A stretch of 38,967 nt of DNA from Salpingoeca rosetta (lineage: Eukaryota; Protista; Choanoflagellata), in contig JAWQFM010000002.1 of the NCBI GenBank assembly GCA_033442325.1, positions 1,492,714-1,531,680 on the forward strand, in the 5' to 3' direction. The first letter of the stretch is position 1; every line of letters starts with the position of its first letter. The notes under the pieces are model-generated. The model saw only the letters and a program-made list of their open reading frames with translations. It was not told the DNA's origin and did not search any database. Below, piece after piece: positions 21,446 through 37,630 of this stretch. The position numbers and the translations under genes were made by a program.

Positions 21446-24077
21446 TCAGTAGCCGCCCTGGTCGCCGAAGATGCGGGCAATATCGGCGTTATGCGGGTTG
21501 ACCTTTGGCACAACGTGTGGGTGCTCCTGCATCAGGTACTTCCAGAACTGCTCTGTGATGAGCGGCTGGGCGTTCTGGCTCGGGTGGAAGCCGTCCACGG
21601 GCTCAATCAGCTGCCACGCCTTCCCGCCGCGCGCCTCCCACTCCTTCAGGGCGGCCATGATCGGGTTGGGGAAGTAGTGCACGTCAAAGTTGTTGAACGT
21701 GTTGTCTTGCGTAATGTTCTTCAGCACGTTGCTGAGGAGGGCGGCGTGGGCGGAGGTGAGGTTGCGCAATGTCTCGTTGGAGTTCATCCACCCGCGGCAG
21801 GGCGAGATGGAGAGGCAGTTGAGAAAGTCGTACACCTGGCCCGTGGTGACGTCATGGTGGAGGGAGCCAATAGGGTGGATGCGCTTGGCCATGGTGTCGT
21901 ACAGGATGCGCCCGTCTGCCAGCCCCATCATGAACACGTGGCTCCCGTTCGGAAGCTTCGTGTCCTGTCGATGCACGGGCGCGCACATGTGTACATGCAA
22001 GACAGTGTGTGAGTGTAGGAGTGTGTGATGTGAGTGTGTGTAGAAGTGTGGTGGGAGAGAGATTGAGCACAGGTGTGCGTGCATGTGCTTGCGTGTGGAT
22101 ATGGGGAAGTCTGGAAAGGAGCACATCATCATCCATCCACGAAACACAGCGATGGTGGCGCGCACCAAGTAGCGGAGCGTGTCCAGGGCGTTGTCGTGCA
22201 TTTCCTTGGGCGTGGTCATGTGTGCAAGCGTGTCCGGGTGGCCGTTGCACACGTCGTTGCCAATGAGGGCGTACATCACCAGCGCCGGGTAGTCGCTCTT
22301 CTGCAGACGGCTCATCGACTGCACGATGGAGCTGTTCATGGACCCGGCCCGCGCCCCGTTGACAGCAATGTTCTGGAAGTCGCGGTGCACGCAGCGGTTG
22401 CGCCGCCACATCACCTGGTACGTCGAGTTCTGCTTGCCCGTCACGTCGGGTGCCCACTGCGTCGTGTTCTCAAAGCCGGTTGTCGCCGACAGCATGGGCC
22501 AGTCAAACTCATTCTCCAGCGTGGGCAGGATGTTTGCGAATGTCGTGTTGTCCCAGTCCACCACGCTCAGGTACTGGTAGGGGATGTGAAAGTGCGCCGA
22601 GGCAGAGTCGCCCAGCACAATGGTGCCCATTGGGTTGGTGTCTGCGCAGTACAGCTCCTCGTATGTCTTTCCAGACTTGGGCTCGATGCCGTAGATGCCG
22701 TTGCAGTTGCTGTCGACCTCACGATCGCCGTCAACGGGGCGCGCGCCAGGGTGCACCGCCGCGTTGGTGTCGCTGCAGTCCTTGCCGCGCCAGTCAGCGC
22801 CGCGCAGCGTGTGCCACGTGCTGAAGCCATCGCCGTCGTCGTCCTTGTACGGCGTGTGGTTGTCGAGGGCGACGATGAGGTCACAGATGGGCTTGAAGAT
22901 CTTGAACTTGCAGAAGGCGGGCGGGTCGTCACGCGGGAGACCGCGAAGGCCCACCGTCTTGCGCACGCGGGCAACAGCGTTGTCCACGCCTTCCTTGGGT
23001 GGCGGGAACAGCTGGCAGGGGCCCGTGCACACGTTGATCGCTTTGCACACCACATCGGGCGTCTCGTGATTGTCAATGTACTCAATGATGTCTGTAAGTC
23101 AGTGGGTGAGGAGCAGCGTAGAGAGGTGAAGGGGGGCAAGTTGGTGAGGCGCAGGCTGGTGGCATGCAGCAGGTCATCAAAAGCTCAACCATAGCACGAC
23201 AACACCAACTAACAACGGCCAACAACCAACAGACAACAACAAACGACAACAACAACCAACAGACAACAACAAACGACAACAACAACCAACAGACAACAAC
23301 AAACAACACCAACTCAAGTAGCACAGCGCAAATGCAAAGCTTCCACCGCCCATGCAGATCGAACAAGCAGTGGTGCGTGCGGGCTGGTGTTGACTCACAA
23401 GGGCCGACTTCGTCGATGAAGGTCTTGCATTCAGCGCGGATGCCCTTTGGGAGAAGGTTGCAGATCTGAGAGAGCGCCTCGCTGGCAGATGCGTTCTTGA
23501 GCTCAGCATACTGTTCAACCAAGGCAACAGAAAGGGTACACACAGCGCACTCCGTCCCGCCATTCACGCCTGCATTCGCACCAAATCAAAGGAGTGGCGT
23601 TGACATATCCATCATACACGACGAAATGATCAGTGACTTTGATTAAAGGTGTGTGGCACGGAGGAACGAAGCACACAGCTTTCATCAATGTCCTCATTGA
23701 ACAAACACATGAACACATGAACACATGGACACATGAACACATGTCCACATGACCACATGTCCACATGACCACATGACCACATGACCACATGACCACATGA
23801 CCACATGAACACATGGACACATGAATGAGCACCCAAACATAAACAAACACGAAACAGCAACAAAGGTGACGGCATGACACTGGGATCAACAGCCGAGTGT
23901 AGCGATTTGGCGAACAGCCCAAACAGAAACAAAAAGCTCACCACCACGAAGGCGTGGGTCACGATCAGTGTCAGCATTTGCGGCGGCCTGAGCTGGTGCA
24001 CACGCAGCCAGGAACAACACACCCAGCACGGCAGCAGCAGCAGCCACTGCCACGCCACGACAAACCACCACAGCCAT
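21446..24077 (-). CDS. AOAH: Acyloxyacyl hydrolase (saposin B + GDSL/SGNH lipase; LPS lipid A deacylase)
   Basis: Exons 24077-23942, 23569-23399, 23091-22166, 21964-21446. Signal peptide; saposin CAVC...C...C; LRGADWRGKDCSD; DSNCNGIYG; catalytic GDSASAHF, GNDVC and EPVDGFHP; C-terminus IFGDQGGY. Confidence 0.95.
23708..23823. repeat. (ACATGACC/ACATGAAC)n 8-bp tandem repeat in AOAH intron 1
   Basis: Degenerate octamer array seen directly. Confidence 0.8.
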
Positions 24078-24168
24078 CTTTGTTTTGGAGGAGGAGGTGC
24101 TTGTGGAAAAATGGTGATTATTGTACCTGATTTTCGGCGTCCGGTGGACGAGCGGGAAGCGAGAAGCG
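24078..24168. promoter_or_regulatory. Very short divergent intergenic region between AOAH and DARS2
   Basis: 91 bp between the predicted ATGs at 24077 (-) and 24169 (+). Confidence 0.5.
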
Positions 24169-27100
24169 ATGATGTGTGCGCATTGGCTGCACCGAGCAGT
24201 AGGTCGTGTGGGCCTGCGTGCTGGTGGTGTGGGTGCCGTGGCTGGACGGGGTTGCAGGTGTGCGTCGATAGCAGTAGGAGTAGTGCCAGGAAGAGAAAGA
24301 GCAGGAAGAAGGATTGCAGGGTATGGAACGCTGGCGTGTTGGACTCGCAACAATGCACGTGGTCTGTGCGTGCAGCAGTCGAAACTGCACACGGCAGCCA
24401 CTGACACGGCAGCAGAACACCCGGCCCCGGGGGCCACTGGAATGAGGACACACACCTGTGGCGACATGACTTTATCCCTGGCAGACACCAGCGTCTCACT
24501 CACAGGCTGGATGGCCTCAAAGCGGTGCGCTGCATGTGTGTATATGGGGGGATGTGTGTGCGAATGTGTGAGAACACGTGTGTGTGTGTGTGTGCGAATG
24601 TGAGTGAATGTATGTGTGTGTGTTTGTATGCGAATGTGAGTGAATGTGCGAATGTGTGAGAACACGTATGTGTGTGTGTGGTCAGTTTGTAACGATCCTC
24701 CTGCCGTGGGGTGGTTGAGTTGCTTGCTTGCAAGAGGTGTCATCTCCTGCTGCTGAGGGATGCTGAGGATGTTCACGACCCGTCCATCATGGTTGGTCTT
24801 CGTTGAGTTCACAGCATCATTGGAGACGACCTTGTATTTGCTGTCCTGCGCGATCACTACGGAGCCGTGCAGTTGAAACTGACAGGCGAAGGTAACCCAA
24901 AGCTCCAACCGTGCTACGCACACGCGTTCACGTGTGTAAAGATGAAGGCGTGTGCGTGCGTACGTGTGTGCGTAACTGCGTGAACATGTGTGTGCGTGTG
25001 CATGTTTCACTTATACTGATGCGTTCTGACTTGGACTCGTTCGTCTTGGTTGTTTTCAGACGCAATTGATCGCGTCACCAACCTCCCGCTGGAGAGCACA
25101 ATTCAAGTGCAAGGTAAGACACATCATTTGTGTGCGTGCGTGTGCGTGTGTGTGTGTGTGTTCGTGCGTGCGTACGTACATGTGTGTACATGTATGTGAG
25201 TGTGAGTGTGTGTACATGTATGTGAGTGTGAGTGTGTGTACATGTATGTGAGTGTGAGTGTGTGTACATGTGTGTGTGCGTGTTCTGGGGTGTATCGCTC
25301 TGCTGTGTATCTTCTTGTGGACGCCCTCATTTGCACACCCATGCACTACTCGGTTTTGCTGACATACACACCTCTGTGTTGCTGTGTCCGATGATGCTCA
25401 AGGGCGCGTCACCGCGAGACCTGCAGACATGGTCAACCCAAAGATGGCCAGTGGCGATGTTGAGGTGCTGGTCAGCTCGCTCGCCGTCCTTGGGACCGCC
25501 ACCAACCAGCCGTTTCAGATTGGCACAGAGGGCTCCACGACACACAAACTGGTAGCATGGCGTGCATGTGTGTATGTCTATGTTTGTTTGTGTGTGTGTG
25601 TGCGTGTGTGTCAACGTATGGATACATGCTTGGTCATCTACTCGTATTCAAATGTGCATGTATGTGCATGTATGTGCGACTAGTTTGTATCGTTGCAATT
25701 CACAACCCACACCCCCTGCCTTTGATAGCCAAAGGAGGATGTGCGACTGACACACCGCCCACTGGATCTACGCCGTCCTGCCCTCCACAATGCCATCGTC
25801 ACCCGCGCCCGCGTCGCCTCCGCCACGCGCCGCTTCCTCGAACACCACGGTTGGTCGTGTGCGTGTGTGTGTGTGTATGTGTCTGTGTCTGTGTCTGTGT
25901 GTGTGTGTGTGTGTGTGCGCGGTACAGCTCCCCTCTTGTGAACCCTTTGTTGGTCAGAGCGTTTTATGCCACGCTTCCCATCCGTCCAGCCCGCAAACTC
26001 ATTCACCCACATCAACCCCGCTCCCCCCCCAACACACACACATCGCGCACGTGTATCTGCTCCGGTTGCGACGCAAAGGGTTTCTTGACATTGAGACGCC
26101 AACGCTGTTCAAGCGGACGCCCGGTGGGGCTGCGGAGTTTCTTGTGCCGACGCAGAAGAAAGGCCTCTTCTATGCGCTGGTGCAGAGCCCACAGCAGTAC
26201 AAGCAGATGCTCATGGTTGGCGGTTTCGACAGGTGTGTGTGTGTATGTGTGTGTATGTGTGTCGTTGTTTGCTCGCGGGAGGAGTTGGGAGAATGAGTGG
26301 GCCCTTTTGGTGCAGTAGCGTGCGAGGTAGCTGCTGCTGTCTCAAGTTGTCATGCGGTACAGTCACGGAGTGAACACACGCGGTTCTCTGAAACATCGCA
26401 TCATCTGTCTTCGTGGCTCACTCCCAACAGGTACTACCAGTTTGCGCGCTGCTACCGCGACGAGGGAGGCCGTCTTGACCGCCAGCCAGAGTTTACCCAG
26501 GTCAGAGTCAGTGCCCATGCGATTGTGTGTGCTTGTATGTATGTATGTGTGTATGTGTGTGTGTGCGTGACGCACGGGCTTTGGTTGTGTGTTTGCGCAC
26601 GATGGTGTTTGATGCATGTGATGCACGAGTTTGCGCATGATGCACGTGCGTCCTTCTGACCCTTCATGACTTGTCGCGTCTTGTCTGTGTGCTGCTGGGC
26701 AGATTGATCTTGAAATGGCATTTGTGACGCAAGAAGACGTGCTGCAGCTGAGTGCGTGGCATCCACGTGTATGTGCGTGTGTGTGTGTGTGTGTATGTGC
26801 GTGTGCGTATCCATGTACGTGTGTCCTTGTTCGAATGTGTGTGTGTGTGTTTGTGCTTCTTGGCGACACCTGACACGACAGCGCTGCACCATGACGCGTC
26901 ACAACGAACCACCATCAGCCGAGGCGCTTGTTGCTTCCATGTGGAAAGAGGGCTGTGGCGTCGACATTCCCACACCATTCACTCGCATGTCATTCCACGA
27001 CGCGATGGCACAGGTCGGTTGTGTGGACTTCAGTGCAGAGTATTGTTGTGTTGTGGTGTGCAATTATAGTTGAGCCTGCTTCCGTGCATCTTGGCGTAAC

Positions 27101-30296: not shown

Positions 30297-31641
30297 CTAG
30301 TGTGAGTTCATTGGGATGGCTGCGTTTGTGTGCAACTTCCACGGGAGGTAGTGTTCGACAAGGAAGCGCGGCCGTTCTGGCGAGTTGAGGATTTCAATCT
30401 CAGCCTTGTGCTCCATCCTTTGCAACAGGAGCAGCTCTTCTCGCATCTGTTGTGGGAGATGCTCCCGTTCACTCAGCGCCTGCACGTGTGGTGACAAGCA
30501 GCGAGGCGTTTGTTGTGAGCACGTGTGTGGTGTCGGCGTGGGTGTGCACGTTGCTTTGGTTGATGTGAAGTGTGTGTTGCAGAAGGTGGTACCGTGCGTG
30601 TTTCCGACCATGTCAGCACGTGTCAAATGGCACAGAGTTCTCTTCACCTCGAGAAGGCGGTATTCCCTGTCAGACATTCGGCTCTGCGGGTGGAGGGCGA
30701 CGTTGAACCTGTGTGTTCGTGCGTGCGTGTGTGTGCGAGTGGTGTGTGTGTGTGTGTATGTGTGTGTGTATGTGTGCGAGTGGAACGTGTGTGTGTGTGA
30801 ATGGACATGTGATGTGATGTGGGTGATATGGCTTTTAAACCTTGTGGTCTGCTTGGTTGCTTGTGTGCAGCAAAGTACTGTGATTCATGATCAATGGTTG
30901 GTGTGCTGGTGCGTTTATCGTTTATGCCAGCGAGTGTTTGCTTACTCTGTGAGGTCTGACGGAAAGACGCCAAGCCAGCGAATGTGCGGGACGGCCAATT
31001 CGTGGTTCTGGAATGCGAGGGACTGGCTTCCGTACGCATACGTGCAGAGTATCTGCGTCGTGGCCGTGCCAATGTGACGGAGGACGGGGCAGCATGAGAA
31101 CACGGTGTGATATTTGGTTGCGTTATCGGGTTCAACACATTGCCTCGCATGGCATGTGTATGTGTGTGTGTGATCGATCACACTGCGTTGGCTCGGCACA
31201 CAGCACAAACGCCCGCTCTGGTTTGCGTGGAATACCTCGAGCCCGTGCGCATCGGCGTCGACCACGACATAGACAGGCACCTGCTCTGCCACCAGCCTCA
31301 CAAAGTATCGGGTGTCCACCCCAGGGAAGCCTTTGCCCTGGTGTAAACACGCGCGCGCGGGTGTGTGTTCAGAGGAGAAGTGCGTGGGTATACAAGTGTG
31401 TACAGCGAGGCGTGGTGGTGTGGTGCGTGCGACTTCGGTCAAGGAACCGAGGTATTGCAAGCAACTTGTGGTCACATGGACATTGGCTCACCGTGATAAG
31501 GAGACAGTTGTGGGTCTCGGCGAAGTTGCAATCCACAAGTTGCTGCGGGTGTTGTCAAGACAGGCACGTGAGAAGACAAATGATGCGCAGCAACATGGTA
31601 TGGTAATAACGAAACTTTCCCTCTGCATTCTGCCCTCCACA

Positions 31642-31711
<70 letters not shown>

Positions 31712-32549
31712 GCATTGCATCCACCTGCGCACTGACTCAACACACCTGAAGGATGGCATCCTTCTCAACGACGAGGGCACAGGTCGCTGTCACGTGGAGT
31801 CGAAGGTCATCTGTGATCGCAGGAATTGGCCGGGTGCCACCGTGATGCTGCTGCTGCTGCTGCTGCTGCTCCTCCTGTTCTTGCTGTGATTGGTGGGCTT
31901 GCTGTTGTTGCTGTTGCTGCTGTTGTTCGTCGTTGTTGTTGATGTGGTTGTTCGTCATGTCGTGTAGAGTCACCGGCGCTTCTCTGTGCTGGGGAAGGAA
32001 GACCTCGACGGGACCGTGGTACAGGCCACGGGAGCTGGTGCTGAGCAAGAGGGAACGCCTTGGCACACCAAGCATGCAGCTTACCAGAAAGATGGCACGA
32101 TCGGCGGAGTGCTGCGTTTGCCCGAACAGGTCGATGTTTGAGTAATACACGTCCCGGATGGATCTCGGGGCGATGGAGGTGACGCACACGTAGATCTCGC
32201 GCATGACGTCCAGTGCCCGCACAATGCGGGGCTCGAAGATGCTCTCGCGCCGAAACCTGACGCGGCATGCATAGTACATGCGGTGTGGGTCAAAGTGGGG
32301 CACGAGCACGGGCACTTTCACCGTGACGCCCGCACCAGCACTGCCACCGGCGCCGGTACTATCACCACTGCGATCACCATCATTGGTCATCGCGCCCAGC
32401 AGTTGCCGCAGGATGTCCTGGACCACCTGCTCGATCCGCCAGGCGATAACCTCTGGCGGTGCGGGCTGCACTTCAAACAGCATCAGCTCTGCATCCTCGT
32501 CGTCACCGTCGTGCAGGCGGCCAGTGCCGCGGCTGTTGAACAGGGCCAT
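30297..32549 (-). CDS. SPO11: Meiotic double-strand-break transesterase Spo11 (TopoVI-A family)
   Basis: Exons approx. 32549-31746, 31542-31492, 31337-31236, 31052-30946, 30708-30648, 30479-30297. Motifs: RDVYY (catalytic Tyr, 32142-32147), LGVPRRSL, SRGL, VVEKDA, ITGKGFP, VDAD.HG, YAYGSQSL, RWLGVFPSD, KAEIE, YLP.K. Confidence 0.95.
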
Positions 32550-32970
32550 GAGGGGGGGGGGGAAGTAACAGCAATGTGACGTTCGTGTACACTATAACAG
32601 CTACCGAGGAGGAGGAGGGAGTAGGAGGAGGAGGAGGAGGAGGAGGAGGAGGAGGAGGAGGAGGAGGAGGAGGAGGCAACAGAAAAGAAAAACGGCGGGA
32701 AGCGAAGGTCTGAAGGTGCACTCGTGCAGTGACCTCGCTCGCTTGCTTGCACGCACATTTGCTGAGGTTTGAGTTTGGCGGGAAACGGCCAGCCGTGTTT
32801 TGCGCGGGAAACATCCAAACAGGAAGGAAGCAGCAGTGTCGATGACAAAACATTTCCACACAACGCACACAACGCACACACGCATACACAACACACACAG
32901 CGCACACACGCACAACGCACACACACGCACACAACGCACACACAACGCACACAACGCACGCAGACACACG
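32550..32970. promoter_or_regulatory. Putative bidirectional promoter of SPO11 and PCH2 with clustered E2F-type motifs
   Basis: GGCGGGAAG at 32694-32702, TTTGGCGGGAAA at 32774-32785 and TTTTGCGCGGGAAA at 32798-32811, between divergent ATGs. Confidence 0.65.
32606..32676. repeat. (GAG)n polypurine tract
   Basis: Seen directly; one interruption near 32620. Confidence 0.9.
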
Positions 32971-33876
32971 ATGTTGACGATTGAGGTGTGCCTGGCAGAC
33001 GAGAGTCTGGTGCCAGAGCAAGAGATCGAGGGTGCGGTGGGCGAGGTGCTGGGACAGCTCCGCGACACGCAACAGGACAGCTGCGCTGATGGCTTTGACA
33101 AGAACAGCTTCGTGTCCATGTGCGGGCAACATCCAGTGCTGACACACAACGCCACATCGATTCGCTGCAGCGGTGAATGGGTATGAAAAGAGCGCGCGCG
33201 TAGATGCGAGACGGGCGTGCATGTGCGTGCTTCTGCGTGTGTGTTTATGTGTGTACATTGTGTGTTTGTGTGCTTGTGCGTGCATGTGTGCTTGTGCGTG
33301 CATGTGTGTGTGTGTGTGCGTGTGTGTGAATGGAGGAGTGACATGATCACGGGTGCAGAAGTTATGTGGCAAATTGCTCTCTGCACCACCACAAGCATGT
33401 ACGCACAAGCTCATGCCCAAGCACACGCACATATGAATGTATGCACACCACCCCTTCCCTCACCTCCTCACACTGACCGTGCAGGTGCCAGGTACGGAAC
33501 CTTCCGTGTGCGTGTACCGCCTGCATACGGACGGTGCAGTGGAGGAGCACGACGCAGAAGAAGAAGTCACCAGCGCGCTGCAATGGGTGCTTCCCGCGGC
33601 AGAGTTTGACAATCTGTGGGACACGCTCATCTACGACACCGACGTCAAGCAGAACCTGCTCTCCTTTGCCACCACCACGCTGCTCTTCTCCGATCACAAC
33701 GTGAACCCAGACATCATCAGTTGGAATAGAGTGGTTCTTCTTCACGGACCTCCAGGCACCGGCAAGGTCAGTGCATAAGCCCGTGAGGCTGCGTGTGAGG
33801 TTTGCGCCTGTATACGGGCGTGCGTCTGTGTCTGCGTGTGCGTTGTCTTGCGTGTGTGTGCGCTTTGCATGTCACC

Positions 33877-33941
<65 letters not shown>

Positions 33942-34878
33942 CGCCCACACAACGCACGGCTGTTGCAGACAACTTTGTGCAAGGCCCTGGCACAGAAGCT
34001 GACGATCCGCTTCTGCAAACGGTACGTCGCCTTCAACCAACACGGGCACCCGTGCTTACTCGCATCACCCGCGAACAAACACAAGTCTACCCCTTGCAAC
34101 CCTCACTGCAATCACAACTGTTGGTGTTCAGGTTTTCGCACGGACAGCTGATTGAAATCAACAGCCACAGCCTCTTCTCCAAGTGGTTCTCCGAGGTCTG
34201 TATGCGTGCTGGTGTGTGCGTGTGTGCGTGCTTGTGTGTGCGTGTGTGCGTGTTGCACGCGCCTGTGTGCGTTTGTAGTATGCCGGAGGTGGGTGCTCAA
34301 TTATTGTCACTCATGTTATGTGCCTCAACTCGCCCGCTCAACATCACTCCCCTTCCCCAATGTCATCCATGTGCAGAGTGGGAAGCTCGTTGGCAAGATG
34401 TTCCAATCGATTCGAGAGCTCATCGAGAACGAGGATTCGTTTGTTTGCGTGCTCATCGACGAGGTGAGGTGCTTGGCTCATATTCTACCAGACAGACAGA
34501 CAGGCAGACAGACAGACAGACAGACACACGGACGAAGACACATACACAGACACATACACAGACACAGACACATACACAGACACAGACACAGACACAGACA
34601 CAGACACAGACACGTACACACAATCGCAGACACATACACAGACACAGACACACAATCGCAGACGGATAGACAGACACCCACCCACCCCCACACCCCCTCC
34701 AAACACACACAGCGACGTCCAATGTACTCGTGCCTCACCCCAGCTGACGTGTGGACAGGTGGAGAGCCTTGCTGCTGCTCGACGCGCCGCAACCAGCGGC
34801 ACAGAGCCGTCTGATGCCATCCGCGTGGTCAATGCTCTCCTCACACAGATTGATCAACTCAAGACGTAATGCCTCAAG

Positions 34879-34917
<39 letters not shown>

Positions 34918-35941
34918 AGTGAAACAGATATCACTTCATATGCACCACTCACGCACACTGTGTTGTTGCTGCAGCCAATAACGCTTGTCGTGTGCACTGT
35001 TTGCAGGTACAAGAATGTCTTGATTCTGACAACATCCAACATCACAGAGGCCATTGACGTTGCCTTTGTCGACAGGTAAGCGAGACGCAATGCAACAGCA
35101 AACAGACAGATGCAATGCAACAGCAAACGCACACACACACGCACACGTAAACACACATACACAAATACATACACACATATGTTCCACGTGCGGCTCTGAC
35201 CCCCCCCCCTCAGCGCATCGTAACCACGCTCTGTTGCTGTCGTGTCATGATATGGCAGGGCGGACTTGAAGTTCTTTATTGGCCTGCCGGGCATAAACGC
35301 GCGGTACCAAATCCTGAGCTCGTGCGTGCGGGAGCTGATGCGCACGGGTCTCGTGCAAGAGGAGCTTCTTATGGACGTCAAGTCCCTCGAGGACATGGAG
35401 TACGCATCCAAACCGAGTCACGAGGGGTTGCGGCGCGCGCGCGCGCGTGTGTGTGTGCATATGTGTGTATGTAGGTGTGTGTATGTGCTGACGTGTGTGT
35501 GTAAGTGTGTGCGTGTGTACGACTGCGTATGCTTCCCTCTGTGTACATGCCCCCATGTCCGTGTGCGTATGAACACTTGTGTACCTTATATTTGCTGCAT
35601 TCATGTCATTGTTGTATGCAGATATGCTGCGACGGAAGCGACGAGGGAAAGCCTAAAGCTGCTTGAACTGGCTAGGTATTGCTCTCGCACGCACGACACA
35701 AATGCATGGCGGTGGTGGCGGTGTCATAGGGTACATGGTTCTCCTCTTCGCTCTCTCTGTCTCTCTGTCACTCTTTAAGACTTTGTGGTTCACGCCAGCG
35801 CCACTGACGCATGCTCTCAGGTTGTGCGAGGGTCTCAGCGGCCGGATGCTGCGCAAGCTCCCGTTTCTCGCCTTTGCTCGACTCCAGGTACGCACCATTC
35901 AACACAGACAGACAGACAGACAGACAGACACACAGACACAC

Positions 35942-35980
<39 letters not shown>

Positions 35981-36287
35981 CACACAGACAGACAGACAGA
36001 CAGACAGACACACAGACAGACAGACACACAGACAGACAGACAGACAGACACACACACAGACACACAGACACACAGACACACACACAGACACACACACACA
36101 CACACACACAAACAAACAAACACAAGACACGTAGCTCGCCCATGGCCGACTTGATCTCATGTGCATGGTGTTGGTGGGTCATGACGTGCAGGCTGCAGGG
36201 GAGGCGATGCCGCTCGCTGCCCTGCTGGAAGCGCTGCGTGTGGCCATCGAGCGTGAGCACCAGTCGCGCCAGAGCCTCATGGCATAG
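32971..36287 (+). CDS. PCH2: Pachytene checkpoint protein 2 / TRIP13 AAA+ ATPase (HORMA remodeller)
   Basis: [18 protein letters not shown]; [18 protein letters not shown] (Walker A); [21 protein letters not shown]; LIDEVESL (Walker B); [17 protein letters not shown]; LTTSN; AFVDRAD; [14 protein letters not shown]. Stop TAG at 36285-36287. The start may have a short upstream exon. Confidence 0.96.
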
Positions 36288-36567: not shown

Positions 36568-37630
36568 ATGGCGGATGCGAAGAGTGTTGTGCCAAAGGTG
36601 CAGGTGAGTGCATCCAATCCACCGAGGACACGATACGAGCGCGTCGGCTCCTATGTTGCCGGTTCAGTCAACGCCTCACATGCCTTGTGCTTTGTGTACC
36701 TTGTGTGCTTTGTATGTCGCGTGTGCCGTGTTTGTGTCAGGCGCGCGTGGAGGTGCAGGGTGTGCCGACGGATATCCTTGTTCTCCGCTTTGCCAATGCA
36801 ACCCAAGTCTGGATCACACAGCTCGATCGAGCTGGCACCGTGGTCAGTGACTTAGGCGCGTGCGCAAGGGGTGTGCGTGTGAGTTGTGTGTGCGTGTGAG
36901 TTGTGTCTGTCGTCTGTGTGAGTGTGTGTGAGTGAGTGAGTGAGTGAGTGAGTGAGTGAGTGAGTGAGTGAGTGAGTGAGTGAGTGAGTGAGTGAGTGAG
37001 TGAGTGAGTGAGTGAGTGAGTGAGTGAGTGAGTAAGTGTGTGTGNNNNNNNNNNNNNNNNNNNNNNNNNNNNNNNNNNNNNNNNNNNNNNNNNNNNNNNN
37101 NNNNNNNNNNNNNNNNNNNNNNNNNNNNNNNNNNNNNNNNNNNNNNNNNNNNNNNNNNNNNNNNNNNNNNNNNNNNNNNNNNNNNNNNNNNNNNNNNNNN
37201 NNNNNNNNNNNNNNNNNNNNNNNNNNNNNNNNNNNNNNNNNNNNNNNNNNNNNNNNNNNNNNNNNNNNNNNNNNNNNNNNNNNNNNNNNNNNNNNNNNNN
37301 NNNNNNNNNNNNNNNNNNNNNNNNNNNNNNNNNNNNNNNNNNNNNNNNNNNNNNNNNNNNNNNNNNNNNNNNNNNNNNNNNNNNNNNNNNNNNNNNNNNN
37401 NNNNNNNNNNNNNNNNNNNNNNNNNNNNNNNNNNNNNNNNNNNNNNNNNNNNNNNNNNNNNNNNNNNNNNNNNNNNNNNNNNNNNNNNNNNNNNNNNNNN
37501 NNNNNNNNNNNNNNNNNNNNNNNNNNNNNNNNNNNNNNNNNNNNNNNNNNNNNNNNNNNNNNNNNNNNNNNNNCACACACACACAGACACCGCACACGCA
37601 CACAGACACGCACACACACACAGACACACA

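What the first reader, a model, noticed from the sequence alone, without database searches (positions are those of the whole stretch)
32690..32815. Cluster of E2F/DP-type sites at the centre of the SPO11-PCH2 promoter
Seen: three same-orientation GCGGGAA cores in ~120 bp (32694-32702, 32774-32785, 32798-32811). TTTGGCGGGAAA is a two-way overlapping site. Known: TTTSSCGS is the E2F consensus, and in mammals E2F6/PRC1.6 and DREAM repress meiotic genes in somatic cells. Inference: E2F-type control of meiotic genes may predate animals. Isolated matches occur elsewhere in the window by chance; the density and position are what stand out.
Basis: partly seen in the sequence, partly recalled or inferred. 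Interest (0 to 1): 0.75.

Follow-up and report, generated by a model that had tools for sequence, protein, structure and literature searches.

The report
Conserved E2F sites between SPO11 and PCH2
Three binding sites for the cell-cycle regulator E2F sit in the short promoter shared by two meiosis genes (SPO11 and PCH2) of the choanoflagellate Salpingoeca rosetta and are kept in a wild marine relative, so they are very probably functional; this extends a control already known in mammals and plants (with a fission-yeast analogue) rather than revealing a new one.

Summary
GGCGGGAAG (32694-32702), TTTGGCGGGAAA (32774-32785) and TTTTGCGCGGGAAA (32798-32811) lie on one strand in the 421-bp spacer between SPO11 (PTSG_01304, minus) and PCH2/TRIP13 (plus) of Salpingoeca rosetta.

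This is not chance. The exact 12-mer occurs 72 times in the genome against 2 for its reversed control, and the class TTTSSCGSSAAA 155 times against 12. Copies have unrelated flanks. They sit upstream of PCNA, MCM5, RAD21, a histone pair, an E2F gene, DMC1 and, less certainly, a HORMAD-like gene.

A wild marine relative keeps the head-to-head layout (SPO11 36% identical, PCH2 exon 83%). Its spacer is unalignable except at the E2F sites. Site 3 and its flank match at 22 of 23 bases.

The genome encodes E2F, DP, E2F7/8-like, pocket, LIN54-like and LIN9-like proteins.

The best reading is a G1/S-type E2F/DP promoter core for PCH2, and probably for SPO11. It belongs to the general E2F regulon and is not an E2F6/PRC1.6-style silencer: there is no E-box or CHR, and E2F6 is vertebrate-only. 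Direction of control and start sites remain untested because the reads call was lost.

The scan had already noted the same theme on other DNA of this genome (ZIP4/DMC1, TERB1-like).

Verdict: new member of a known kind; interest 0.5.

The parts
32694..32702 (+). Site 1: GGCGGGAAG, a near-consensus E2F4-type site (8 of 9; CTTCCCGCC on the other strand)
   Evidence: No aligned counterpart in the wild relative, which instead has a TTTGGCGGCAAA 12-mer 29 bp upstream of its second site.
32774..32785 (+). Site 2: TTTGGCGGGAAA, the optimal two-way E2F/DP 12-mer
   Evidence: 72 exact copies genome-wide against 2 for the control. Aligned to TTTGGCGGCAGAAA in the relative, at similar spacing to site 3 (28 against 25 bp).
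32798..32811 (+). Site 3: TTTTGCGCGGGAAA, with a perfect TTTCCCGC octamer on the reverse strand
   Evidence: The core is identical in the wild relative.
32799..32821 (.). Conserved 23-bp block TTTGCGCGGGAAA-C-ATCCAAACA: site 3 plus a 9-bp flank of unknown role
   Evidence: 22 of 23 bases identical to L120:1233-1255; best block in 1,000 shuffles is 16; the E2F + ATCCAAA combination occurs once in the genome.
32550..32970 (.). 421-bp head-to-head spacer (shared promoter region) between the SPO11 and PCH2 start codons
   Evidence: No CHR, E-box, CCAAT, TATA or MYB match.
30297..32549 (-). SPO11 gene (PTSG_01304, 435 aa; TP6A_N + Toprim)
32971..36287 (+). PCH2/TRIP13 gene (409 aa; AAA + AAA_lid_TRIP13_C)
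   Evidence: P0056, named thyroid receptor-interacting protein 13 by NCBI.
32607..32676 (.). (GGA)n microsatellite next to the SPO11 start codon; bounds the unique promoter core on the left
32857..32969 (.). CA-rich (CACAACG-like) repeat next to the PCH2 start codon; bounds the unique promoter core on the right

Best explanation
The three sites form the E2F/DP-binding core of a bidirectional promoter shared by PCH2/TRIP13 and SPO11.

Mechanism (inferred): an S. rosetta E2F-DP heterodimer binds the optimal palindromic site 2 and the flanking sites 1 and 3. Pocket-protein or DREAM-type partners would hold the promoter off outside the G1/S window, and release at S-phase entry, mitotic or pre-meiotic, would switch it on.

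The locus is one member of an E2F regulon of roughly 150 sites. That regulon covers replication and chromosome genes (PCNA, MCM5, RAD21, histones, E2F itself) and also early meiotic genes (DMC1 and probably a HORMAD-like gene).

Shown: the sites exist, the motif class is strongly selected genome-wide, it sits at canonical targets, the factors are encoded, and the sites are conserved in a diverged relative.

Inferred: binding by E2F/DP, the direction and timing of control, and that SPO11 as well as PCH2 is driven.
For: Sequence.

Genome-wide excess: TTTSSCGSSAAA 155 against 12; TTTGGCGGGAAA 72 against 2; TTTSGCGCSAAA 44 against 4. Flanks of 11 copies are unrelated, so this is not a repeat family.

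12-mers within about 0.5 kb upstream of canonical targets:
- PCNA, 195 bp.
- MCM5, about 200 bp.
- A RAD21-type kleisin, 387 bp.
- An E2F gene, about 412 bp.
- A divergent histone pair.
- DMC1, 400-500 bp, as a twin inverted pair.
Six of about 20 genes with usable 5' ends carry one, against 0.04 expected (P about 3e-12).

Factors encoded: E2F with the RRIYD motif, DP with RRRVYD and a DP domain, a two-domain E2F7/8-like gene, RB_B pocket hits, a LIN54-like protein with two CXC domains, and LIN9/DIRP.

Conservation: contigs L120-L125 from several marine samples keep SPO11 and PCH2 head to head. Their spacer has three same-strand E2F-type sites and aligns to S. rosetta only there. A third, more distant PCH2 gene (L126) has TTTGGCGGGAAAC about 105 bp before its ATG.

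Literature: mouse Trip13 has a validated DREAM site (PMC10581385).
Against: - No binding, expression or start-site data.
- Same-strand perfect-octamer pairs are no commoner than a reversed control (6 against 7).
- RNR small subunit, three or four B-family polymerase loci and six of eight MCM loci have no listed 12-mer nearby, so the 12-mer marks only part of the expected regulon.
- No E2F-octamer excess upstream of PCH2 in 53 distant metagenomic loci.
- Two stand-alone SPO11 genes from other organisms have no nearby site, so SPO11's share in the control is the weakest link.
- Site 1 has no aligned counterpart in the relative.
Confidence: 0.7

Rival explanations
1. PCH2-only element. The cluster is the ordinary cell-cycle promoter of PCH2/TRIP13, which also works in mitosis on MAD2-type HORMA proteins. 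SPO11 merely abuts it and is controlled by something else.
For: - Mouse Trip13 is a validated DREAM target (PMC10581385).
- L126 has the same 12-mer about 105 bp before a PCH2 gene whose neighbour is not SPO11.
- Two stand-alone SPO11 genes have no nearby E2F site.
- In both S. rosetta and the relative, the conserved site 3 lies nearer the PCH2 ATG.
Against: - The spacer is only 421 bp (336 bp in the relative) and its unique core about 180 bp, leaving little room for a separate SPO11 promoter.
- The head-to-head layout is kept despite SPO11 diverging to 36% identity.
- Other early meiotic genes (DMC1, and probably a HORMAD-like gene) carry the same motif.
Confidence: 0.3
2. Dedicated silencer of meiotic genes. 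The sites chiefly recruit a repressive E2F complex (E2F6/PRC1.6-like or DREAM) that keeps SPO11 and PCH2 off in vegetative cells.
For: - The TCCCGC core is the E2F6 site at mouse germline genes (PMC8195999).
- Arabidopsis DREAM factors repress SPO11-1/2 and DMC1 in somatic cells (PMC13674478).
- S. rosetta encodes pocket, LIN54-like and LIN9-like proteins.
- Ectopic Spo11 is harmful in fission yeast, where the RB analogue Whi5 restrains rec12 and hop1 (PMC12828573).
Against: - E2F6 is a vertebrate-only subgroup (PMC3224931).
- The spacer has no E-box and no CHR.
- The identical motif sits at PCNA, MCM5, RAD21 and histone genes, which must be active in every cycle.
- A unicellular organism has no soma to protect.
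Confidence: 0.15
3. Chance cluster, or sites for a different GC-box factor rather than E2F/DP.
For: - Genome-wide, same-strand octamer pairs match the control count.
- GCGGGAA as a 7-mer is generally over-represented in the window, including in coding exons.
- No binding data.
Against: - A 36-fold excess of the exact 12-mer.
- Its presence at textbook E2F targets.
- A conserved footprint in a diverged relative.
- E2F and DP with intact DNA-contact motifs.
Confidence: 0.05

Closest known systems
E2F-class (G1/S) targets of E2F/RB and DREAM in animals, including the mouse Trip13 promoter
   Same: Same consensus (TTTSSCGC; GGCGGGAAA). Promoter-proximal position. Same kinds of target genes (PCNA, MCM, cohesin, histones, E2F itself, TRIP13). 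The same factor families are encoded.
   Different: Nothing has been measured in S. rosetta. The mouse Trip13 element was scored as a DREAM binding site in reporter assays (PMC10581385), whereas this spacer has E2F sites only and no CHR. The promoter is shared with SPO11.
Mammalian E2F6/PRC1.6 silencing of germline and meiotic genes
   Same: TCCCGC-core sites in promoters of meiosis genes (PMC8195999).
   Different: E2F6 is a vertebrate-only subgroup (PMC3224931). There is no MGA/MAX E-box here. No evidence of Polycomb or DNA-methylation follow-up. The same motif serves housekeeping S-phase genes here.
Arabidopsis DREAM (TCX5/6, ALY, E2FB) control of SPO11-1/2, DMC1 and MER3
   Same: The same gene set (SPO11, DMC1) is tied to the RB-E2F-MuvB system outside animals (PMC13674478, PMC13674485).
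   Different: In plants the shown contact is the LIN54-type TCX protein on TTCAAA-like motifs, with MYB3R motifs nearby. Here the sites are E2F-type and no CHR/TCX motif is present.
Fission-yeast MBF (MCB box) with Whi5 at early meiotic genes
   Same: The G1/S transcription factor also drives rec12 (SPO11), hop1 and meu13, and an RB-like repressor holds them down in quiescence (PMC12828573). The logic matches what is proposed here.
   Different: MBF is not homologous to E2F, and the DNA motif differs. This is an analogy only.

Membership tests
E2F/DP response element of the RB-E2F regulon | Match to the consensus TTTSSCGC / GGCGGGAAA | tested here: met
   Two perfect octamers, one of them in a two-way 12-mer, plus one 8-of-9 site.
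E2F/DP response element of the RB-E2F regulon | Lies close to the transcription start | tested here: inconclusive
   146-276 bp upstream of both start codons, the same range as at PCNA, MCM5, RAD21 and DMC1.
E2F/DP response element of the RB-E2F regulon | Organism encodes E2F and DP with the DNA-contact motif | tested here: met
   E2F_TDP loci on six contigs. The C21 E2F has RRIYD. The C23 gene has RRRVYD plus a DP domain. The C8 gene has two DNA-binding domains.
E2F/DP response element of the RB-E2F regulon | Motif over-represented and found at canonical S-phase targets in the same genome | tested here: met
   155 against 12, 72 against 2 and 44 against 4. Found at PCNA, MCM5, another MCM, RAD21, histones and an E2F gene. 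P about 3e-12.
E2F/DP response element of the RB-E2F regulon | Kept in the orthologous promoter of a diverged relative | tested here: met
   L120-L125: three same-strand E2F-type sites in an otherwise unalignable spacer. A 22-of-23 block, against a best of 16 in 1,000 shuffles.
E2F/DP response element of the RB-E2F regulon | Bound by E2F/DP; flanking genes expressed periodically | not testable with these tools
   No ChIP or gel-shift data.
E2F6/PRC1.6 germline-gene silencer | An E2F6 paralogue exists | not tested
   Literature only: E2F6 forms a vertebrate subgroup, and Monosiga has a single outgroup E2F (PMC3224931). The S. rosetta E2Fs were not placed on a tree here.
E2F6/PRC1.6 germline-gene silencer | Partner MGA/MAX E-box CACGTG in the promoter (present at part of the mouse targets) | tested here: not met
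   None in the 421-bp spacer.
DREAM target promoter | CHR (TTYGAA), alone or as CDE/CHR | tested here: not met
   No TTTGAA, TTCAAA or TTTAAA in the spacer. The conserved flank ATCCAAACA is not a canonical CHR.
DREAM target promoter | Pocket protein and MuvB core encoded | tested here: met
   RB_B hits on C32 and C26, a LIN54-like protein with two CXC domains on C11, and LIN9/DIRP on C26. RB_A was not detected, probably because of short exons.

The most novel reading that the evidence does not exclude
In the closest unicellular relatives of animals, the early meiotic recombination toolkit (SPO11, PCH2, DMC1, a HORMAD-like axis gene and their head-to-head partners) is wired as a branch of the E2F/RB G1/S regulon, so that meiotic competence is licensed at entry into (pre-meiotic) S phase. 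Animal soma-versus-germline silencing by DREAM and E2F6 would then be a later re-use of these ancestral sites. A corollary is that 'meiotic gene up-regulation' in unicellular holozoans may simply track proliferation.
Probability: 0.3. Interest if true: 0.7.

Novelty: new member of a known kind. Interest (0 to 1): 0.5.

Why it matters
Together with the plant and mammalian data, a conserved E2F element at SPO11-PCH2 (and at DMC1) in a choanoflagellate supports an old, possibly ancestral, link between the G1/S switch and early meiotic genes.

[quoted passage not shown] The prediction can therefore be tested directly by mutating two short sites and reading two divergent transcripts.

It also carries a practical warning. 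In Ministeria, PCH2, SPO11 and other toolkit genes rise together with replication and mitosis genes (PMC13366479). If these genes sit in the E2F regulon, their up-regulation alone is weak evidence for sex.

Tried and rejected
(1) RNA evidence. Start sites and expression are therefore unknown.

(2) The SPO11 protein against metagenome contigs gave no relative.

(3) 80 PCH2 loci from metagenomes were all distant, and none has SPO11 next to it. A start-codon-anchored count showed no E2F-octamer excess upstream (5 lineages against about 6 for the control). My first impression of sites at -100 to -230 was wrong: those lie in coding sequence.

(4) Family searches for HOP2, MND1 and RB_A found nothing, and only one kleisin turned up. 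Short exons are the likely cause, so this is not evidence of absence. MSH4 and MSH5 could not be told apart among five MutS loci. The one MutS locus with a 12-mer is MSH3/6-like or bacterial-like.

Of 20 open frames tested near ten sites, only histones and a thioredoxin-fold protein were named. The DMC1 neighbour gave only a weak TPR hit, so its 'ZIP4' label is unverified here.

(6) Same-strand octamer pairs show no excess.

(7) E2F + ATCCAAA as a composite motif occurs only at this locus.

(8) Stand-alone SPO11 genes of two other organisms have no proximal E2F site.

(9) The rest of the E2F-family and cell-cycle literature search turned up no paper on E2F sites in choanoflagellate promoters.

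I never joined exons into a spliced model. Full-length SPO11 and PCH2 were taken as the database proteins P0001 and P0056.

Full report
WHAT IS THERE

The window comes from Salpingoeca rosetta. The 270-residue open frame at 31737-32549 (minus) is 100% identical to PTSG_01304, a 435-aa protein with TP6A_N and Toprim domains, that is SPO11. The public annotation of the same locus places a 409-aa AAA protein with the TRIP13 lid domain head to head with it, at window 32971-36287 on the plus strand. This protein was later recovered as P0056, named thyroid receptor-interacting protein 13.

The start codons are 421 bp apart.
- GGCGGGAAG at 32694-32702.
- TTTGGCGGGAAA at 32774-32785.
- TTTTGCGCGGGAAA at 32798-32811.

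A (GGA)n run borders the SPO11 ATG and a CA-rich repeat borders the PCH2 ATG. The three sites therefore occupy the only 180 bp or so of unique sequence. The spacer has no CHR, E-box, CCAAT, TATA or MYB match.

IS IT MORE THAN CHANCE?

In the window, GCGGGAA is five-fold over expectation (10 against 1.94). The seven other copies are bare 7-mers, some of them in exons. The strict octamer TTTSSCGC is at expectation in the window (4 against 3.18), with two of the four here.

Genome-wide, the octamer shows a modest excess over its reversed control (7,579 against 5,366). The two-way 12-mer class shows a very large one:
- TTTSSCGSSAAA: 155 against 12.
- Exact TTTGGCGGGAAA: 72 against 2.
- TTTSGCGCSAAA: 44 against 4.

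So roughly 97% of copies of site 2's sequence are there for a reason. Eleven copies that I could read have unrelated flanks, so this is not a dispersed repeat.

One honest negative: same-strand pairs of the perfect octamer are no commoner than the control (6 against 7).

IS THE MOTIF THE E2F SITE OF THIS ORGANISM?

The factors are encoded:
- E2F_TDP domains at seven places.
- One gene on C21 with a complete domain and the RRIYD contact motif.
- One gene on C23 with RRRVYD and a DP domain.
- One gene on C8 with two DNA-binding domains, the E2F7/8 architecture.
- RB_B pocket hits, a LIN54-like protein with two CXC domains, and a LIN9/DIRP protein.

This matches what is published for Monosiga, which has E2F, E2F7/8, DP and RB, with E2F6 confined to vertebrates (PMC3224931).

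The 12-mers sit where E2F sites sit in animals:

| Gene | Site and position |
|---|---|
| PCNA | TTTGGCGCCAAA, 195 bp before codon 1 |
| MCM5 (first exon opens MSGWDEGQLFYSD) | TTTCGCGC plus TTTGGCGCCAAA, about 200 bp upstream |
| A second MCM | a similar cluster |
| RAD21-type kleisin | TTTGGCGGGAAA, 387 bp before residue 1 |
| E2F gene on C21 | about 412 bp before the ATG |
| Divergent core-histone pair | two copies between the genes |

Six of about twenty genes with usable 5' ends carry a listed 12-mer within 1 kb, against 0.04 expected. The marking is not universal. RNR small subunit, the B-family polymerases and most MCM loci show at most single octamers.

OTHER MEIOTIC GENES

The two RAD51-family loci were told apart with NCBIfam models, giving C14 as RAD51 and C11 as DMC1. 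DMC1 has TTTGGCGGGAAA and an inverted TTCCCGCCAAAA 89 bp apart. They lie 400-500 bp before its ATG and 360-460 bp before a divergent gene.

The only HORMA hit in the genome resembles HORMAD1 rather than MAD2, but weakly (E 0.46). It has GGCGGGAAA about 225 bp and 975 bp upstream of its N-terminal exon, and the exact 12-mer about 1.9 kb upstream.

HOP2, MND1, REC8, MSH4 and MSH5 could not be located or identified.

CONSERVATION, THE DECISIVE RESULT

A full-library search with PCH2 exon 2 found a fragment 82% identical (P0057). It lies on about 2-kb contigs from several marine samples (L120-L125). These contigs carry SPO11 on the opposite strand (36% identity over about 300 residues) and PCH2 exon 2 (83%). 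The head-to-head layout is therefore kept in a clearly different species. Its spacer is 336 bp.

Aligned to S. rosetta, the spacer is noise except at the E2F sites:
- TTTGCGCGGGAAA-N-ATCCAAACA is identical at 22 of 23 positions (window 32799-32821). The best block in 1,000 shuffles is 16.
- Site 2 aligns with TTTGGCGGCAGAAA at nearly the same distance from site 3 (28 against 25 bp).
- A further 12-mer, TTTGGCGGCAAA, lies 29 bp upstream.
- All are in the same orientation.

A third PCH2 gene, from an unidentified organism (L126, 55-60% identical), has TTTGGCGGGAAAC about 105 bp before its ATG, and its neighbour is not SPO11. Two other PCH2 contigs (L127, L130) and 53 distant metagenomic PCH2 loci show nothing special. 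Two stand-alone SPO11 genes have no proximal site.

HOW IT MOST LIKELY WORKS

I take the cluster to be the E2F/DP core of a shared promoter.

Shown:
- The motif is selected genome-wide.
- It sits at canonical targets.
- The factors are encoded.
- The footprint is conserved.

Inferred:
- An E2F-DP dimer binds.
- Pocket or DREAM-type partners gate the promoter to the G1/S window.
- Both genes are driven.

PCH2 is the safer target. Its animal orthologue TRIP13 is a cell-cycle gene with a validated DREAM site (PMC10581385), and L126 shows the motif at PCH2 without SPO11. For SPO11, the argument rests on the tiny shared spacer and its retention in the relative. It also rests on the parallel with DMC1 here, with fission-yeast MBF/Whi5 at rec12 and hop1 (PMC12828573), and with E2F motifs topping the STRA8-activated set at mouse meiotic entry (PMC6392498).

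Whether the net effect in vegetative cells is repression or a low S-phase pulse cannot be told from sequence.

COMPARISON WITH WHAT IS KNOWN

The E2F6/PRC1.6 analogy (PMC8195999) fails on the paralogue and on the missing E-box. The CDE/CHR type of DREAM element fails on the missing CHR. What fits is the E2F class of G1/S promoters.

The evolutionary claim is reasonable but no longer new in kind. Two October 2026 papers show Arabidopsis DREAM components binding SPO11-1/2, DMC1 and MER3 promoters, with SPO11-1/2 and DMC1 derepressed in somatic tissue of the mutants (PMC13674478, PMC13674485). No paper that I could find treats choanoflagellate promoters.

The scan itself had already reported the theme on other DNA of this genome (s1-433400, s1-432451).

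LIMITS

- No reads could be laid. Places 33275-33338 were left out of every later search.
- Exons were never joined.

VERDICT

This is a real, conserved E2F cluster and a new member of a known kind. Interest 0.5.

Noticed in passing
window 32813-32821 (and L120:1247-1255): The nine bases after site 3, ATCCAAACA, are as conserved in the wild relative as the E2F core. This is not a canonical CHR or CCAAT box. The reverse strand reads TGTTTGGAT, which is forkhead-like. The E2F + ATCCAAA combination is unique in the genome. It may be a partner-factor site or the PCH2 initiator.
   Followed up: partly
L119:3001-3037 (G000:C34:150656): Another locus repeats the local arrangement: TTTGGCGGGAAA, then 15 nt, then GCGCGGGAA (16 nt here). 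The neighbouring gene could not be named.
   Followed up: partly
L118:2984-3507 (G000:C32:368178 and 368669): A divergent core-histone gene pair has two copies of a TTTCGCGC + TTTGGCGGGAAA module 491 bp apart, so histone genes appear to be E2F-wired in this organism.
   Followed up: partly
G000:C21:1049844 (L001:1023): The best E2F gene of the genome has the optimal 12-mer, followed by an inverted CCGCCAAA, about 412 bp before its own ATG. This suggests autoregulation, as in animals.
   Followed up: partly
window 31737-32084 (SPO11 exon 1, minus strand): The annotated SPO11 keeps a glutamine-rich low-complexity stretch (NNNDEQQQ...QQEQEEQQ) between the TP6A_N and Toprim domains. A GTAAGC donor-like site lies at about 32084, so part of this stretch could be an unrecognised intron.
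   Followed up: no
window 24077-24169: A saposin/GDSL-lipase gene and an aspartyl-tRNA-synthetase-like gene are head to head with only 92 bp between coding starts. A bare GCGGGAAG lies 17 bp before the synthetase ATG.
   Followed up: no
L126:371-383: An unidentified eukaryote (Logan run SRR24908316, GC 44%) has TTTGGCGGGAAAC about 105 bp before the ATG of its PCH2 gene (MDTIFVEALQ...). The upstream divergent open frame is not SPO11.
   Followed up: partly
window 33275-33338 and about 37040-37560: A TG microsatellite in PCH2 intron 1 tripped the reads filter. A run of N (an assembly gap) lies downstream of PCH2.
   Followed up: no
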